A DNA stretch of 63,340 nt, counting the filler, from Octopus bimaculoides (taxonomy: Eukaryota), in the NCBI RefSeq assembly GCF_001194135.2. It is 8 parts of 6 records of this genome, joined end to end, with 100 filler letters (N's around TTAATTAATTAA, not from the genome) between each part and the next. Parts side by side here need not be neighbours in the genome. Positions count along the whole stretch, not along the records: positions 1 to 5,891 come from NC_068986.1; 7 more parts are not named here. One strand, 5' to 3'. The position numbers were made by a program, and so were the translations under genes. Shown here piece by piece: positions 1 through 5,935 of this stretch (within the stretch, counting starts at the first letter, position 1; every line of letters begins with the position of its first letter). Below the pieces are notes generated by a model. The model worked only from the letters and a program-made list of their open reading frames with translations. It did no database searches and had not been told where the DNA came from.

Positions 1-214
1 TACTTATTAAATTTTTTTATATGTGGTTGTAGATTTTCATGGATGAATTAAATAATTGTGTTTTTTTTTCTCTAAATTATATATTTATATATTATATATT
101 GTGAAAATTGGAATTAGGAATTTGGAATTTTTCCCTAATATTTTTATCATTATATATATATATATATATAAATTTAAGGAATGGAGTAAACGCATGTTAT
201 AACTGCATACTTTA

Positions 215-298
215 TTCCGACATATGTTTCGAAGAATTACAATTTATGCGATCCATAGGAATCGTCGATGTTAGAAATGTAAACTTCTCCTCAGGGAA
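215..298 (-). ncRNA. Type I hammerhead ribozyme, canonical core
   Basis: Minus strand: TTCC-CTGAGGA-GAAG...CTTC-GAAA-CATATG-TC/GGAA; helix I TTCC:GGAA, helix II GAAG:CTTC, palindromic helix III ACATATGT, GUC cleavage triplet. Confidence 0.8.
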
Positions 299-593
299 AT
301 GTTTGGGAACCATCTTAAACGTAAGATATTATGACATTATAATGCCTCTTTATTACATAACATTCCTCTCCAAAAATTTTTTTTATTAGATCTATATCAT
401 CCTATCTACTCATAAATCTACACTCTGAATTTTCCTTCTCTCTATCTCTCCTTTTTTTTTTCTTGTCCAACCTACTATCTGGTAGCGTCCAAATCTCTAA
501 CGGTTTTTTCAAATAATTTACGTTATAACTTTATCCAACTATAGGTCTCATACTCGGTCATAATGTCTTACCTTTAAGATGGTTCCCATACGT

Positions 594-677: not shown

Positions 678-1180
678 TAAAGTATGCAGTTATAACATGC
701 GTTTACTCCACTCTTTAAATTTATATATACTCAAATACCCAAAATATCAAGGAGTTTCTGCCTCACCAACAGGAGTTACACCACAGTTATTTTGTGATCT
801 TTGCTACCCTGGTTTCTATTAACCCATTTATTCTATCCGAATTATTATTAATTAGGATAAAATAAATACATATAATTAAATATATATATATATATATANN
901 NNNNNNNNNNNNNNNNNNNNNNNNNNNNNNNNNNNNNNNNNNNNNNNNNNNNNNNNNNNNNNNNNNNNNNNNNNNNNNNNNNNNNNNNNNNNNNNNNNNN
1001 NNNNNNNNNNNNNNNNNNNNNNNNNNNNNNNNNNNNAAATAGCAGTCAAAGCTTGACTCTAAACCACAATTCAAGCCATATTCAAAACCATATTCAATTT
1101 ACTTACTTATATATTCAAATAGGCACCCAAACCTTAATTTTGAATCCGCTTTCAATCCTTAACTAATATAATATCATTCT

Positions 1181-1410
1181 AAGGCGGTGAGCTGGCAGAA
1201 TCGTTAGCACGCCGGGCGAAATGCTTCGCAGTATCTCGTCTGCCGCTATCTTCTGAGTTCAAATTCCACTGAGGTCGACTTAGCCTTTCATTCTTTCGGT
1301 GTCGATTAAATAAGTACCACTTACGCACTGGGGTCGATGTAATCGACTTAATCCTTTTGTCTGTACTTGTTTATCCACTCCATGTTTAGCTCCTTTGGGC
1401 AATAAAGAAA
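1181..1410 (+). mobile_element. tRNA-derived SINE, family A (tail variant beta)
   Basis: A-box-like TGGCAGAATCG, B-box-like GAGTTCAAATTCC, body GAGGTCGACTTAGCCTTTCAT..., tail ending GGGCAATAAAGAAA; many copies in window. Confidence 0.85.
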
Positions 1411-1995: not shown

Positions 1996-3232
1996 TTCGA
2001 AGAATGCAACCGGGACATGAAGACAATCTGGAAGTTCGTTACGTAATAAAGTACAAGAAGGCCAGGCAAAGCAAACCGGCCGGGAAGGTCATCATTATCA
2101 TCATCATGTTCCTCCTTTTTTATAGCAATGGTATCATCTTCATCCATTGGATCCTCCCTGGTCTGACGGTCAACAAAGAGTAATTTGTGGAGGTTTTGGA
2201 GGGAGGGAGTTCAAGGGAATATTTCGTGGCAAAAGCCACCGCACTTGCACCAGCAAAATACAGCAGGTCACAATCCCATCCTGTAACCAACTATTTAAAA
2301 AAAAAATAGGCATCAAAATTCCCTCACCCTTTCTCCATTTCAGGCCTTGCACCCTGTGAGTTTTGCTTGTTCCTCAAGGTGAGAGAGAAGACGAAAAGAG
2401 ATGGCTATGACAAGGATTCTGGACACCTTCGTTTTGAAGGAACTCAACGGGCCTTCACGGAGTGGCTGGAATGTTGGCTCAAGTTCATTGACGTCACAGG
2501 ATCCAACTATGAAGCATATCGGACATTTTGCATTAATTTGTCTCAAAACTCCAGGAATTCCCCTTCTATACTTTGTTTTATTCGAGGTGGCTGTTTAATT
2601 CGAACTCTCTGTAACTCACATCTTTCATGAAAATTATATTGTATACGCTATATTTTATATATTGCATATAATATATTTTATATATCAAAGTATATGTTAT
2701 ATATCAAATAAATAAAGAATCCATACAACACAGCTCATTTTATTTTTGTTATTATACAGAAGTTTGAATATACTCTGATTTAGAATTCCTTATCAAACAA
2801 ATATGCATTTAGAATAGAGTTGAGAGCGTTCAGAATATTCCTGCTGGAAATATAGATTCCACAGCAATAACAGTATACTTTATTAGAACAACATTTGCCA
2901 AACAATTCTATAGAAATATACACCATTAAGTGCAAGAGTGATATTTTATAAACAAACAATAATTTCTGTGATATATTGAAACTAGTAGGTAGTGTATTCT
3001 GGAGAAGTATTACATTATGTAACATACTAAGAATTTTTTTCCCAAACTAATCCAAAGTTGCTTAGAATTGTGAAATTATGAAACTACGGAAGCCATATAT
3101 ATACACAGTTTATATAGTAAATTAGGCATGTAACAAAATAACACATATTTAAATACTATTCATGTGCCTTATACATACATACATACGTAAATATATGTAT
3201 ATATACATATATACACAAACATATGTATATAT

Positions 3233-3267
<35 letters not shown>

Positions 3268-3466
3268 NNNNNNNNNNNNNNNNNNNNNNNNNNNNNNNNN
3301 NNNNNNNNNNNNNNNNNNNNNNNNNNNNNNNNNNNNNNNNNNNNNNNNNNNNNNNNNNNNNNNNNNNNNNNNNNNNNNNNNNNNNNNNNNNNNNNNNNNN
3401 NNNNNNNNNNNNNNNNNNNNNNNNNNNNNNNNNNNNNNNNNNNNNNNNNNNNNNNNNNNNNNNNNN

Positions 3467-3528
3467 ATTGTGCTGATGAACGAAATCTAGATTCATTCTA
3501 GTAATCGCGAAATCGGTCGATACGCAAT
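3467..3528 (+). ncRNA. Type I hammerhead ribozyme, tandem copy 1
   Basis: ATTGTG CTGATGA(3473-3479) [A]CGA..CTAGA-ttcat-TCTAG..TCG[C] GAAA(3509-3512) TCG-GT-CGA TA/CGCAAT; helix I ATTGTG:CGCAAT, helix III ATCG:CGAT; first helix II pair is A.C instead of G-C. Confidence 0.7.
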
Positions 3529-3987
3529 TAAGTCTATTTTAAAAGTAAGTTGGTCATCTTCTGTTGGTTGTTTTTTCCTCGCATTAGGTACTAAATGTGG
3601 TTATTTTGAGAAGTCCACTGTGTGGCGTTATTATTTTTCTATAATAATGCCCTTTATATAAATATAAACGAATAATTATATTCTTGGGAATAGAAATTTC
3701 CCTAATGAATTTTTTTACACGCTGGCTTCTTGATAAAATTCTTATAAAAGAGTTTTATCCTTTTTTGAATTTATTTATCAAATATATACACGGAATGCAT
3801 TCAATGTTGAATTTTTTAAATCCTGTCTCCACATGGGTACCCCCAAAAAAACAACCCGGAAGTATTTCCCGCTTCTTTGATGAAGATATATACAGATAAA
3901 CTTCATTCCCTTTACTCTGTCGGATACGTAGTTGTTCGGTTTGGTGAGGTGATAATTCTGTTTATTCATATATATTTTTGGGACAAT

Positions 3988-4049
3988 ATTGTGCTGATGA
4001 ACGAAATCTAGATTCATTCTAGTAATCGCGAAATCGGTCGATACGCAAT
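3988..4049 (+). ncRNA. Type I hammerhead ribozyme, tandem copy 2
   Basis: Same sequence as 3467-3528; core CTGATGA at 3994-4000; predicted cleavage after 4043. Confidence 0.7.
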
Positions 4050-4203
4050 TAAGTCTATTTTAAAAGTAAGTTGGTCATCTTCTGTTAGTTGTTTTTTCCT
4101 CGCATAGGTACTAAATGTGGTTTATTTTGAGAAGTCCACTGTATGGCGTTATTATTTTTCTATAATAATATCCTTTATATAAATATATATATATATATAT
4201 ATA

Positions 4204-5280
4204 CAGAGGTTGGACAAAATAATGGAAACACCTTAATATTTTCACACAAATTTATTTTAATACGGTGTGAGACCGCCTTTGGCAGTAATTACAGCTTGAA
4301 TTCTACGAGGTATAGACTAGTACAAAGTTTGAATTATTTCCAAAGGAATTTTTGTTTATCCTTCAGTTACAACAGTCGCCAGTTCTTGTAGTGATGATGG
4401 TGGAGGATATCGACTCCTTGCTTGTTTTTCTAAAATGTATCGTAAATGTTCAATAATATTGAGATCTGAGGACTCTAGTAGCCACATAAGATGTTCAACT
4501 TCACTAGAATGTTCCTCATGCCATTCAGTAACAACTTTAGCTGTGTGAATTGGTGCATTATCATTCTGAATGATGGTGTTTCCCTCTGGAAACAGTTCTG
4601 CAGCTATAGGATGAATTTGATCTGATAAAATGCTTAAATAGTCTTGACTATTAATTCTGCCACGAAGGGAAACCATTGGGCCGGCGGATTTCCAAGATAT
4701 TGCCCCCCACCACAGGATCATCACAGATCCTCCTCCATGTTTAACAGCTGGAAGAAGGCAGTCTGAGTTAAATGCTTCTTTTGGCTGTCTCCACATGTAT
4801 ACTCGGCCGGTAGTCCGAAAGAAGGTAAAGGTTGACTCCTCTGAGAAAATAACATTCTTCCACTGCTCTAGGGACCAATTCTGTAGGTTTTTACTCCACT
4901 CTAAACACTTTGCAACGTTTGTTTTTGAAAGAAGTGGTTTTCTGATTGCAGCCCTCTCGTGAAATTCGGCTATATGTAGCTGCCGGCGAACAATTTTGTG
5001 GAAACTGGGTTCTTGAGGTGGTCATTAAGCTCTGCAGTAATTTTGTGATCCTTTCTAACAATTTGCGTAAGAGTCCGATGTTCCCTATCTGAAAGTTTTG
5101 GTTTTCTTCTGGAGTTTTGTTTCGACGAGGAGGTTTTTCTCTCTTTCTCAGAACATATTAAGCAACACTAATAATAAATCAAAAGAACATAAAAATGAAC
5201 AAGCATTTCACGGTTTTATAGATATTTCAAAATTATAATGCTATGATGCTAGGTATTTCCATTATTTTGTCCAACTCCGG
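4204..5280 (-). mobile_element. Tc1-like DNA transposon, internally deleted
   Basis: TIRs CAGAGGTTGGACAAAATAATGGAAACACCT (from 4204) and AGGTATTTCCATTATTTTGTCCAACTCCGG (to 5280), TA on both sides; 1077 bp is shorter than a full Tc1. Confidence 0.92.
4356..4880 (-). pseudogene. Tc1 DD34E transposase catalytic domain, degenerate
   Basis: WKNVIFSEES...VKHGGGSVM..WGAISW...QNDNAPIHTAKVV...SSDLNIIEHL; first catalytic Asp reads Glu and the WPxxSPDLNPIE motif is eroded. Confidence 0.88.
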
Positions 5281-5935
5281 TATATATACATATTCTTTTA
5301 TTCTTTTATATGTTTCAGCCTTGAGGCTGTGACCATGTTGGGGCACCGACATTGTAATCACCTATTAAATGTCAAATTTTATGGGTTTGACTGCTGGTAA
5401 AAGAGGGAGTTCAATATGACTGATATCTTTTGAGTTTCCTGCCTTGATATTGGTTCATCTGGGATCTTGGATAGTAAGGGGTCAAGTTGTTTCTTATGCA
5501 TACATAAACACATGCACTTACACACATATATATATATATACATAAATATATATATATATAAATAAGGATAAGATCGATATTTAAAATATTGATCTTATCA
5601 AGTGGTCAGCATGGGAATAAAAACCATCAAAGGTAATAATTATTTAAAATTATAATACAGGGTATCTAAGAGATACCATCACGCTGAAAAATAGCAGTCA
5701 AATCCTGACTCTAAAACCACAATAAATGTCCACCCTTATTTATATAAATTAGTTTTGTCAGTGTATTTACTGCGCTGATATTCTGTCCGGATCGCACGAG
5801 AAGTTTTTAGGCGGGCTATTTAAGCTAGTCGTGTGCATACGTGCATATATATGTATGTATACGCCCGTATATGTAAGTATACTGTTTATGTNNNNNNNNN
5901 NNNNNNNNNNNNNNNNNNNNNNNNNNNNNNNNNNN

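What the first reader, a model, noticed from the sequence alone, without database searches (positions are those of the whole stretch)
3467..4185. Tandem double hammerhead that would excise a 521-nt RNA (retrozyme-like unit)
Two direct repeats put identical hammerheads 521 nt apart, with predicted cuts after 3522 and 4043 (AUA triplet). Helix III ATCG-GT-CGAT has only a 2-nt loop as a monomer but pairs completely between two copies with tandem G.U pairs, which is what the tandem supplies. The enclosed segment has weak Penelope N-terminal similarity, suggesting a deleted LTR-like Penelope derivative that could release and circularise a monomer. Caveats: the first helix II pair is A.C in both copies, and copy 1 starts at a gap edge.
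Basis: partly seen in the sequence, partly recalled or inferred. Interest (0 to 1): 0.85.

Follow-up and report, generated by a model that had tools for sequence, protein, structure and literature searches.

The report
Tandem Penelope-type hammerhead repeat (retrozyme-like)
A short non-coding repeat in an AT-rich animal genome carries a hammerhead self-cleaving RNA motif twice, 521 bases apart; it fits the known class of small ribozyme-bearing retroelements derived from Penelope-like elements, so it is a good but ordinary example whose activity is untested.

Summary
A 200-nt direct repeat (3467-3666 and 3988-4187, about 97% identical) places two identical type I hammerhead motifs 521 nt apart, with cut sites after 3522 and 4043. 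Every core position is present except G10.1, which is A opposite C. Helix III (AUCG-GU-CGAU) cannot close as a 2-nt hairpin but forms a 10-bp duplex between two copies.

A motif this good arises by chance about 3e-9 per base, or about 4e-5 for this window. A second, unrelated hammerhead-like motif sits in an inverted repeat at 163-729.

The unit is non-coding and AT-rich. Its RNA folds far better than shuffles (z about -5.5). It abuts (TA)n and ends 144 nt past the cut. These traits fit animal non-LTR retrozymes, that is, non-autonomous Penelope-like derivatives inserted as a partial tandem.

Not supported:
- Penelope protein similarity was not found (Pfam, HMMER against 1.84 billion proteins, word searches).
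- Rfam's hammerhead models do not match.
- No relatives were found, so there is no family consensus or covariation.

Cleavage and circularisation remain inferred. The A.C pair and a competing fold argue for weak or lost activity. I rate it a new member of a known kind, of modest interest.

The parts
3467..3528 (+). Hammerhead motif, copy 1 (type I): helix I 3467-3472/3523-3528, core CUGAUGA 3473-3479, helix II 3480-3508, GAA 3509-3511, helix III 3512-3521, A17 = 3522 (cut 3522|3523)
   Evidence: Sequence; descriptor scan; chance rate 3.4e-9 per base; structure energies. No Rfam match.
3988..4049 (+). Hammerhead motif, copy 2, identical to copy 1; A17 = 4043 (cut 4043|4044)
3467..3666 (+). Upstream copy of the 200-nt direct repeat (pseudo-LTR-like). 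Its true 5' limit is hidden by the N gap 3268-3466.
   Evidence: the repeat finder D6/D8/D12; alignment A1.
3988..4187 (+). Downstream copy of the direct repeat. It ends where (TA)n begins, which I take as the 3' end of the element, 144 nt after the cut site.
3667..3987 (+). Single-copy internal segment of the unit (321 nt), non-coding
   Evidence: No Pfam match, no homologues.
3523..4043 (+). The 521-nt RNA that double cleavage would release. It is predicted to be highly self-paired, with its ends brought together by helix I.
   Evidence: Linear MFE -133.6 kcal/mol, z -5.8 / -5.3. Circular MFE -127.8, z -5.65, 64% paired. Seven of eight control windows of 521 nt gave z between -0.75 and +1.4.
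3170..3267 (.). TA/CA-rich microsatellite upstream of the gap; probable left part of the target microsatellite
   Evidence: TRF; sequence.
4176..4203 (.). (TA)14 directly after repeat copy 2; probable right part of the target. It continues at 5281-5289 beyond a later Tc1-like insertion.
   Evidence: TRF; sequence.

Best explanation
This is a partial head-to-tail tandem (at least 1.4 units, period 521 bp) of a short, non-coding, hammerhead-bearing retroelement. It is of the kind called animal non-LTR retrozymes, now regarded as non-autonomous derivatives of Penelope-like elements (PLEs). It is inserted in a (TA)n microsatellite.

Proposed mechanism:
1. (Inferred) A transcript reads through both repeats.
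2. (Shown as possible by sequence and energy) The two hammerheads cannot close helix III alone, so they pair their AUCGGUCGAU strands into a 10-bp helix. This gives a domain-swapped double hammerhead in which helix I of one copy is completed by the other copy.
3. (Inferred) Each site cuts after A17 (3522 and 4043). This releases a 521-nt RNA with 5'-OH and 2',3'-cyclic phosphate ends, held together by helix I.
4. (Inferred from published work on other species) A host RtcB-type ligase circularises the RNA.
5. (Inferred from published work on other species) A PLE reverse transcriptase/GIY-YIG endonuclease supplied in trans copies more than one unit length and inserts it at AT-rich DNA. That would explain the partial tandem, the (TA)n flanks and the 3' end about 140 nt past the ribozyme.

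This particular copy probably cleaves poorly or not at all, because of the A10.1.C11.1 mismatch and a competing fold. Both repeats share A10.1, so the source element already carried it when this copy was made.
For: Motif and chance:
- All core positions except 10.1 are present in correct order and spacing.
- Chance expectation is about 4e-5 per window.
- None of 36 metagenomic sequences that share the core plus the helix III string has both helix I >= 4 bp and helix II >= 3 bp.

Architecture matches published PLE/animal type I hammerheads (PMC4209133): long helix II (3 + 5 bp), open helix I of 6 bp with no loop 1, and a short self-complementary helix III that requires a dimer.

Energetics:
- Helix III duplex -8.4 kcal/mol.
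- Double hammerhead -28.8 against cofold MFE -32.1 kcal/mol.
- In the 583-nt tandem transcript, -146.8 against -149.2 kcal/mol. It is within reach, since tertiary core energy is not modelled.

Properties of the unit:
- Period 521 bp lies within the reported range of 51-972 bp. Most families have 7 or fewer units (10.64898/2026.07.22.740005).
- G+C is 32%, non-coding, RNA highly self-paired, as described for retrozymes (PMC7229834).

Insertion anatomy:
- (TA)n lies on both sides.
- The 3' end is 144 nt after the cut. In the one PLE studied in vitro, reverse transcription starts inside the first ~172 nt after the ORF start, the cut lies 26 nt after that start, and targets are AT-rich (PMC11167929).
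- Microsatellite targets, (TA)n included, are reported for Naiad and Neptune PLEs (PMC8557442).

A second, unrelated hammerhead-like motif lies in an outward-facing inverted repeat ending in (TA)n at 163-729. This is the other typical PLE arrangement. It shows that such elements populate this genome.

The AUA triplet occurs in natural active hammerheads (PMC1636495).
Against: - A10.1.C11.1 replaces the pair that PMC4209133 lists as highly conserved even in minimal PLE hammerheads.
- Rfam hammerhead covariance models give no match even at E <= 10 on 734 nt.
- The predicted lowest-energy fold pairs the core CUGAU with AUCGG: monomer -14.9 against -9.1 kcal/mol for the hammerhead fold.
- No second family member was found anywhere.
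- No sequence link to any PLE was shown.
- Only 1.4 units are visible, and the upstream copy begins at a gap.
- (TA)n tracts are common in this window, so flanking by them is weaker evidence than it looks.
- PLE hammerheads cleave poorly in vitro and are dispensable for insertion in vitro.
Confidence: 0.68

Rival explanations
1. Dead relic. The element is of the kind described, but this copy (and perhaps its whole lineage) has lost ribozyme activity. No 521-nt RNA is excised, and the repeat is only a fossil of a past PLE-mediated insertion. This rival concerns present function, not identity, so it overlaps with the best explanation.
For: - A.C at 10.1/11.1 in both copies.
- A competing, more stable fold hides the core.
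- The two repeats have diverged at 5 events in 200 nt, so the insertion is not recent.
- A Tc1-like element has since inserted in the flanking (TA)n.
- No Rfam match.
- The window is a mosaic of decayed transposons.
Against: - Apart from position 10.1, every core position and all three helices are intact in both copies.
- All 5 differences between the repeats fall outside the hammerhead and the 37 nt after it.
- A10.1 predates the duplication, so the element moved while carrying it.
- A still offers N7 at the metal site next to A9, and an A+.C wobble is isosteric with G.U (general knowledge, not tested here).
Confidence: 0.45
2. Pseudo-LTRs of an internally deleted autonomous Penelope-like element. 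On this view the 321-459 nt between the ribozymes is what is left of the RT/endonuclease ORF.
For: - Direct repeats with a hammerhead flanking an internal segment is the PLE layout (PMC4209133).
- The AUG inside CUGAUGA opens a frame, as in the Anolis PLE. After one stop it stays open for 56 codons.
- Stop-free stretches tile the + strand.
Against: - No Pfam RT or GIY-YIG signal, and no homologue for any frame.
- The minus strand has even longer open stretches (93 codons), so openness is not a coding signal here.
Confidence: 0.15
3. Assembly artefact. The genome holds one copy, and the 200-nt duplication comes from an unmerged haplotype or a repeat-resolution error next to the gap. In that case no tandem ribozyme pair exists.
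For: - Copy 1 starts at the very first base after a 199-N gap.
- The first 99 nt of the two copies are identical.
- The assembly is visibly fragmented at microsatellites (gaps at 899-1036 and 3268-3466, each after (TA)n).
Against: - Both copies and the junction 3666|3667 lie inside one gap-free contig (3467-5891). The duplicate is not across the gap.
- The copies differ at 5 events, including two indels.
- Partial tandems are the expected native form of such elements.
Confidence: 0.12
4. Chance hammerhead-like string inside an unrelated local duplication or unclassified repeat.
For: - About 20 motifs of this quality are expected by chance in a 3-Gb genome (extrapolated).
- No Rfam match.
- No relatives to show conservation.
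Against: - Expectation is about 4e-5 for this window.
- The motif also has features not required by the descriptor: a self-complementary helix III including its loop, an extra 5-bp distal helix II, duplication in tandem at retrozyme-like spacing, (TA)n flanks and a highly structured unit.
- A second independent motif lies 3 kb away.
Confidence: 0.05

Closest known systems
Animal non-LTR retrozymes (Cervera & de la Pena 2020, PMC7229834; Li, Clavereau & Pollet 2026 preprint, 10.64898/2026.07.22.740005)
   Same: A type I hammerhead in each unit of a short, AT-rich, non-coding head-to-tail repeat. Dimers are common. The RNA is highly self-paired. The proposed cycle is self-cleavage, RtcB circularisation and PLE-mediated retrotransposition. 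The unit length of 521 bp is inside the reported 51-972 bp range.
   Different: The classical retrozyme hammerheads have a 4-bp helix II and loop 1-loop 2 contacts. This one has an 8-bp interrupted helix II, no loop 1, and an A.C at 10.1/11.1. Only 1.4 units are visible. No expression or copy-number data exist.
Minimal hammerheads in the pseudo-LTRs of Penelope-like elements (Cervera & de la Pena 2014, PMC4209133; Frangieh et al. 2024, PMC11167929)
   Same: Long helix II, short open helix I, and a small self-complementary helix III that needs a dimer. The motif lies in direct repeats. Targets are AT-rich or microsatellite DNA. The 3' end lies roughly 150 nt or less after the ribozyme. Intrinsic activity is expected to be low.
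   Different: There is no RT/GIY-YIG ORF between the repeats. G10.1-C11.1 is not kept. The usual bulged nucleotide after A9 is absent. No sequence similarity to any PLE was shown.
Hammerhead satellites: newt satellite 2 (~330 bp) and Dolichopoda cave-cricket pDo500 (~500 bp) (PMC7229834; PMC2837043)
   Same: Tandem units of a few hundred bp. The hammerhead has a helix III too weak to act as a monomer, so it cleaves as a double hammerhead in multimeric transcripts.
   Different: Those are long arrays with canonical loop-loop contacts and demonstrated transcripts. Here there is a two-copy partial tandem and no transcript evidence.
Plant LTR retrozymes (Cervera et al. 2016, PMC4918200)
   Same: Two hammerheads in direct repeats bracket a non-coding segment that is released and circularised. 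The element is non-autonomous.
   Different: The plant elements carry type III hammerheads, true LTRs with PBS/PPT, 4-bp target duplications and G+C above 55%, and they are mobilised by Ty3-type elements. None of this applies here.

Membership tests
Hammerhead ribozyme, type I | Conserved core C3 U4 G5 A6 N7 G8 A9 and G12 A13 A14 in the right order between three helices | tested here: met
   CUGAUGA 3473-3479 and GAA 3509-3511, and the same at +521.
Hammerhead ribozyme, type I | A15.1-U16.1 pair closing helix III, and H17 (not G) at the cut site | tested here: met
   A3512-U3521 and A17 = 3522. The triplet is AUA, which is known in natural hammerheads (PMC1636495).
Hammerhead ribozyme, type I | Helix I open-ended, helices II and III closed by loops | tested here: met
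   Helix I has 6 bp (one G.U). Helix II has 3 + 5 bp with a UUCAU loop. Helix III has 4 bp/2-nt loop on paper, 3 bp plus a tetraloop in the energy model, and 10 bp as a dimer.
Hammerhead ribozyme, type I | G10.1-C11.1 pair at the base of helix II (highly or 'quasi' conserved) | tested here: not met
   A3480 lies opposite C3508 in both copies. No alternative register restores a pair.
Hammerhead ribozyme, type I | Match to the curated covariance models (Rfam Hammerhead families) | tested here: not met
   No hammerhead hit at E <= 1 on the whole piece or at E <= 10 on 3467-4200. The paper that described minimal PLE hammerheads found them with a relaxed structure descriptor because canonical helix sizes returned very few (PMC4209133). 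The two papers consulted that compare them call them minimal or atypical type I variants.
Hammerhead ribozyme, type I | Helices supported by covariation among relatives | not testable with these tools
   No relatives were found in any collection. The two copies are identical across the motif.
Hammerhead ribozyme, type I | Site-specific self-cleavage | not testable with these tools
   This needs in vitro transcription or RNA data.
Animal non-LTR retrozyme | Head-to-tail repeats of a few hundred bp, each with a type I hammerhead | tested here: met
   Period 521 bp. Two hammerheads and 1.38 units are visible, and the upstream extent is hidden by the gap.
Animal non-LTR retrozyme | Low G+C (<45-50%) and no coding capacity | tested here: met
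   G+C 0.32. No Pfam or homology signal.
Animal non-LTR retrozyme | Highly self-paired monomer RNA | tested here: met
   z -5.3 to -5.8 linear and -5.65 circular. Controls were near 0, except one that contains (TA)n.
Animal non-LTR retrozyme | Multicopy family in the genome; expressed as linear and circular RNA | not testable with these tools
   Neither the host genome nor its transcriptome is available. The host was not identified.
Penelope-like element (autonomous) | Single ORF with a telomerase-like RT and a GIY-YIG endonuclease between the pseudo-LTRs | tested here: not met
   Only 459 nt lie between the ribozymes. There is no RT or GIY-YIG signal. It is therefore not an autonomous PLE.
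Penelope-like element derivative (non-autonomous) | Hammerhead of PLE architecture: long helix II, short open helix I, self-complementary helix III | tested here: met
   compared with the description in PMC4209133.
Penelope-like element derivative (non-autonomous) | [quoted passage not shown] | tested here: not met
   Treating A3480 as a bulge leaves C.C at 10.1/11.1 (sequence).
Penelope-like element derivative (non-autonomous) | Partial-tandem insertion into AT-rich or microsatellite DNA, with the 3' end a short distance past the ribozyme | tested here: met
   (TA)n at 3170-3267 and 4176-4203. The 3' end at 4187 is 144 nt after the cut. Compared. The 5' junction is hidden by the gap.
Penelope-like element derivative (non-autonomous) | Sequence similarity of the termini to a PLE of the same genome | not testable with these tools
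   No host genome or PLE repeat library is at hand. The protein-level tests were negative.

The most novel reading that the evidence does not exclude
The A10.1.C11.1 hammerhead is not a defect but a working natural variant, for example through an A+.C wobble or with help from a PLE protein. On this reading it still excises a 521-nt circular RNA from a two-copy locus, in a host lineage where retrozymes have not been described. Because both copies share the variant, the element would have moved while carrying it. That would relax what is taken to be the most conserved helix II pair of the ribozyme.
Probability: 0.12. Interest if true: 0.5.

Novelty: new member of a known kind. Interest (0 to 1): 0.3.

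Why it matters
If it is active, the locus would add a new sequence family to the small circular-RNA retroelements of animals. It would also give a natural test of how far the G10.1-C11.1 pair can be relaxed.

Even as a fossil it is useful in three ways:
- It ties a retrozyme-like unit to Penelope-type insertion anatomy: (TA)n target, partial tandem, and a 3' end about 140 nt past the ribozyme. This supports the recent proposal that animal retrozymes are non-autonomous PLE derivatives.
- It shows that curated covariance models miss this class, so descriptor-based scans are needed to annotate such genomes.
- The class itself is well described, so the general significance is modest.

Tried and rejected
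- Rfam on the whole piece and on 3467-4200 at permissive thresholds found no hammerhead, only microsatellite-driven miRNA noise.
- An exact-pattern scan for the motif in bacterial/archaeal genomes, viral contigs and metagenomes found nothing.
- A relaxed pattern in metagenomes gave 36 hits. All are chance matches, lacking either helix I (>= 4 bp) or helix II (>= 3 bp), and none resembles the unit. They served as a negative control.
- Exact look-ups of three window ORFs found nothing on record.
- Word-indexed protein searches with the 79-aa minus-strand ORF, and with the 56-aa frame after the core AUG, found nothing.
- HMMER of the 71-aa ORF against 1.84 billion representatives gave two unrelated repetitive proteins.
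- Pfam on all long stop-free segments gave nothing above noise.
- Literature string searches for the ribozyme, the SINE-like repeat and the Tc1 terminal repeat found nothing. The supplement of the 2014 PLE hammerhead paper is not held.
- I tried to identify the host through the Tc1-like transposase. The nearest relatives are only 74% identical (protein). The two ENA contigs fetched share nothing but the Tc1 element, at 76-79%, so the host remains unknown. My impression that the SINE-like repeats look cephalopod is from memory and unverified.
- My guess that 2000-2630 holds a mariner remnant was not confirmed by Pfam.
- I rejected the alternative register with a bulged A after A9, because it gives C.C.
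- I rejected a monomeric 4-bp helix III with a 2-nt loop, which is sterically disallowed.
Full report
**1. What is in the sequence**

The piece is AT-rich (G+C mostly 0.25-0.45). It has two N gaps, at 899-1036 and 3268-3466, and each follows a (TA)n tract.

From the first base after the second gap, a 200-nt stretch (3467-3666) recurs at 3988-4187. The repeat finder reports it as families D6, D8 and D12 with spacing 521/520. The pairwise alignment shows five differences: a G/A substitution, two single-base indels, another G/A substitution, and an adjacent GC/AT change. All lie after the first 99 nt. Similarity ends where copy 2 runs into (TA)14 (4176-4203) and copy 1 continues into unique sequence (3667 onward).

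Both copies, and the junction 3666|3667, lie in one uninterrupted contig (3467-5891). The duplicate is therefore not a pair of unmerged contig ends across the gap.

**2. The hammerhead motif**

Reading the sequence gives, for copy 1:
- helix I AUUGUG (3467-3472) paired with CGCAAU (3523-3528): 6 bp, one of them G.U
- core CUGAUGA (3473-3479)
- helix II (3480-3508): A.C, then CGA/UCG, a 3x3 internal loop, CUAGA/UCUAG, and the loop UUCAU
- G12 A13 A14 (3509-3511)
- helix III AUCG-GU-CGAU (3512-3521), with A15.1-U16.1
- A17 at 3522

My own descriptor scan of both strands recovered exactly these two sites.

The only departure from the consensus core and its closing pairs is A10.1 opposite C11.1. 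Treating that A as the bulged nucleotide often seen after A9 leaves C.C, so no register rescues the pair. AUA before the cut is sub-optimal, but it occurs in natural active hammerheads (PMC1636495).

**3. Is it more than chance?**

I simulated 295 Mb of first-order Markov sequence with the window's dinucleotide make-up:
- The relaxed descriptor hit 43 times (1.5e-7 per base).
- A motif as good as this one (helix I >= 6 bp, helix III >= 4 bp, helix II >= 3 bp) hit once (3.4e-9 per base). That is about 4e-5 expected for the two strands of this piece.
- A 3-Gb genome would still hold roughly 20 such strings by chance, so the motif alone is not proof if the scan was genome-wide.

Three things go beyond the descriptor:
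- Helix III, including its 2-nt loop, is self-complementary. The motif also has a further 5-bp distal helix II.
- It is duplicated in tandem.
- Among 36 metagenomic sequences that contain the core plus the exact helix III string, none has both a helix I of at least 4 bp and a helix II of at least 3 bp.

The same scan also found a second, unrelated hammerhead-like motif in both arms of the 173-nt inverted repeat at 163-335/557-729. Two independent motifs in 5.5 kb, against an expectation of 0.002, means this genome is populated by real hammerhead-bearing repeats.

**4. Negative result from the curated models**

Rfam 15 gives no hammerhead match at E <= 1 on the piece, nor at E <= 10 on 3467-4200. 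This counts against simple membership.

There is a plausible reason. The paper that defined the minimal PLE hammerheads found them with a relaxed structure descriptor, because canonical helix sizes returned very few hits (PMC4209133). It and the 2020 retrozyme paper, the two sources consulted that compare them, describe them as minimal or atypical type I variants. I did not test whether the Rfam models recover such motifs.

**5. Dimer requirement and energetics**

- A 2-nt hairpin loop is disallowed in the energy model. As a monomer, helix III can only be 3 bp plus a tetraloop.
- The whole monomeric hammerhead fold scores -9.1 kcal/mol. A competing fold in which CUGAU pairs with AUCGG scores -14.9.
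- Two copies can pair their AUCGGUCGAU strands into 10 bp with two central G.U pairs (-8.4 kcal/mol).
- Written as a nested, domain-swapped double hammerhead, the dimer scores -28.8 against a cofold optimum of -32.1. In the native 583-nt tandem transcript, the double hammerhead scores -146.8 against -149.2.

The active form is therefore close to the predicted optimum but not the optimum. The model ignores the tertiary energy of the core.

This matches the published picture of animal type I and PLE hammerheads. Their helix III is too weak for a monomer, they act in multimeric transcripts, and they stay silent in the monomeric circle (PMC4209133; PMC7229834). In the predicted circular monomer the core is indeed sequestered.

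**6. The unit**

The 521-nt RNA between the cuts folds to -133.6 kcal/mol, with z = -5.8 and -5.3 in my own run. As a circle it folds to -127.8, with z = -5.65 and 64% of bases paired. Helix I brings its ends together.

Seven of eight control windows of 521 nt from the same piece gave z between -0.75 and +1.4. The eighth (z = -7.1) contains a (TA)n tract and a palindrome.

The unit has no coding signal:
- No Pfam family matches any long stop-free segment on either strand.
- There is no homologue of the 79-aa ORF.
- There is no homologue of the 56-aa frame that follows the AUG inside CUGAUGA, which is where the ORF of the Anolis PLE begins.
- HMMER of the 71-aa ORF against 1.84 billion representatives gave two unrelated repetitive proteins.

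**7. Insertion anatomy**

A TA/CA microsatellite (3170-3267) lies upstream of the gap. (TA)14 follows copy 2 directly. A Tc1-like remnant (4204-5280) has since landed in that tract, and the tract resumes at 5281-5289. The element thus sits inside a (TA)n microsatellite.

Its 3' end (4187) is 144 nt after the cut. Three published observations fit this:
- Microsatellite targets are reported for PLEs: (TA)n for Naiads, and a similar bias is hypothesised for Neptune (PMC8557442).
- PLEs usually insert as partial tandems that create pseudo-LTRs, often with an inverted 5'-truncated copy alongside.
- In the one PLE reconstituted in vitro, the target is AT-rich. Reverse transcription starts internally within about 172 nt after the ORF start, and the hammerhead cut lies 26 nt after that start (PMC11167929). 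This predicts a 3' end up to about 146 nt past the cut.

The match is suggestive, not proof. It rests on one PLE of another clade, and (TA)n tracts are common in this window.

**8. Most likely mechanism**

*Shown:* the motif, the tandem, the possibility of a dimeric helix III, the structured non-coding unit, and the (TA)n flanks.

*Inferred from the literature on other species:*
- transcription through the tandem
- double-hammerhead cleavage that releases a 521-nt RNA with 5'-OH and 2',3'-cyclic phosphate ends
- circularisation by an RtcB-type ligase (PMC7229834)
- more-than-unit-length reverse transcription and insertion by a PLE enzyme supplied in trans

A 2026 preprint reports that animal retrozymes co-occur with PLEs and cluster with their pseudo-LTRs. 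It gives unit lengths of 51-972 bp and says most families have at most seven units. The present locus fits that description.

Both repeats carry A10.1, and two identical later mutations are very unlikely. The source RNA therefore already had A10.1. This is compatible with the finding that hammerhead cleavage is dispensable for PLE insertion in vitro. Whether this variant cleaves at all is open. I consider weak or lost activity somewhat more likely than not.

**9. Rivals**

- *Dead relic.* Same identity but no present function. This remains quite plausible.
- *Internally deleted autonomous PLE.* This lacks any protein trace.
- *Assembly artefact.* This is weakened by the single-contig argument and by the indel differences, but only long reads can exclude it.
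- *Pure chance.* This is very unlikely given sections 3, 6 and 7.

**10. Comparison with what is known, and novelty**

The locus works like, and most probably is, a member of the animal non-LTR retrozyme / non-autonomous PLE class. It has a PLE-style rather than a canonical hammerhead.

It is not an autonomous PLE, because it has no ORF. It is not a plant-type LTR retrozyme, because it has a type I motif, no LTR features and low G+C. One quasi-conserved hammerhead feature (G10.1-C11.1) and the Rfam model test are not met. I therefore file it as a probable member, not a proven one.

No relatives were found in the collections available. They hold little or no sequence from the unidentified host. 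The family is new to these databases, but the kind is known. Interest is modest, at 0.3.

Noticed in passing
window 163-335 and 557-729 (motifs at 594-677 on +, 298-215 on -): A second hammerhead-like motif, unrelated in sequence to the finding, sits in each arm of a 173-nt inverted repeat (95% complementary, 221-nt spacer). It reads UUCC-CUGACGA-GAAG...CUUC-GAAA-CAUAUGU-C-GGAA. It has a canonical G10.1-C11.1, a GUC triplet and a fully palindromic helix III (ACAUAUGU). Within the core the arms differ only at the free position N7 (C or G). The arms point outward and end at (TA)n, like the inverted arrangement described for Penelope-like copies. The chance expectation for any relaxed hit in the window is 0.002.
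   Followed up: partly
window 4204-5280, minus strand: A Tc1-like transposon remnant with 30-nt terminal inverted repeats (CAGAGGTTGGACAAAATAATGGAAACACCT) and a 146-aa ORF that matches Pfam DDE_3. It is inserted at a TA inside the (TA)n that follows repeat copy 2. The nearest relatives are 74% (protein) and 76-79% (DNA) identical, in contigs of ENA assembly ERZ25070786, so they do not identify the host.
   Followed up: yes
window 1183-1300 and 1890-1995: Two diverged copies of a tRNA-derived-SINE-like repeat share a B-box-like TTCTGAGTTCAAATTCC. ARAGORN calls no tRNA. From memory they resemble cephalopod SINEs, but this was not verified.
   Followed up: partly
window 3473-3477 with 3512-3516 (and +521): The core CUGAU is complementary to AUCGG of helix III. 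The resulting inactive fold is the predicted optimum for the monomer, the dimer and the circle. It resembles the metastable core-trapping structures discussed for viroid hammerheads, and it may be a built-in off-switch.
   Followed up: partly
window 3467-3565 vs 3988-4086: All five differences between the two repeat copies lie downstream of the first 99 nt, that is, after the hammerhead plus 37 nt. This could reflect constraint, gene conversion or assembly collapse. With five events the chance is about 3%, and the test is post hoc.
   Followed up: no
window 899-1036 and 3268-3466: Both N gaps start directly after (TA)n tracts. The assembly seems to break at microsatellites rather than at the 521-bp repeat.
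   Followed up: no
window 1037-1063 and 5689-5715: A 27-nt repeat (AAATAGCAGTCAAAGCTTGACTCTAAA, 93% identical) extends to about 40 nt by eye. It is probably part of another dispersed repeat family.
   Followed up: no
window 5303-5823: A control segment folds with z = -7.1. This is explained by a (TA)n tract (5526-5564) and a palindrome near 5567-5600 (GGATAAGATCGATATTTAAAATATTGATCTTATC).
   Followed up: no
window 3476-3658 and 3648-3896 (+), 3781-4059 (-): There are unusually long stop-free stretches on both strands of the unit (56, 83 and 93 codons) in 32% G+C DNA. The + strand frame starts at the AUG inside CUGAUGA but stops after four codons. No homologues were found for any of them.
   Followed up: partly
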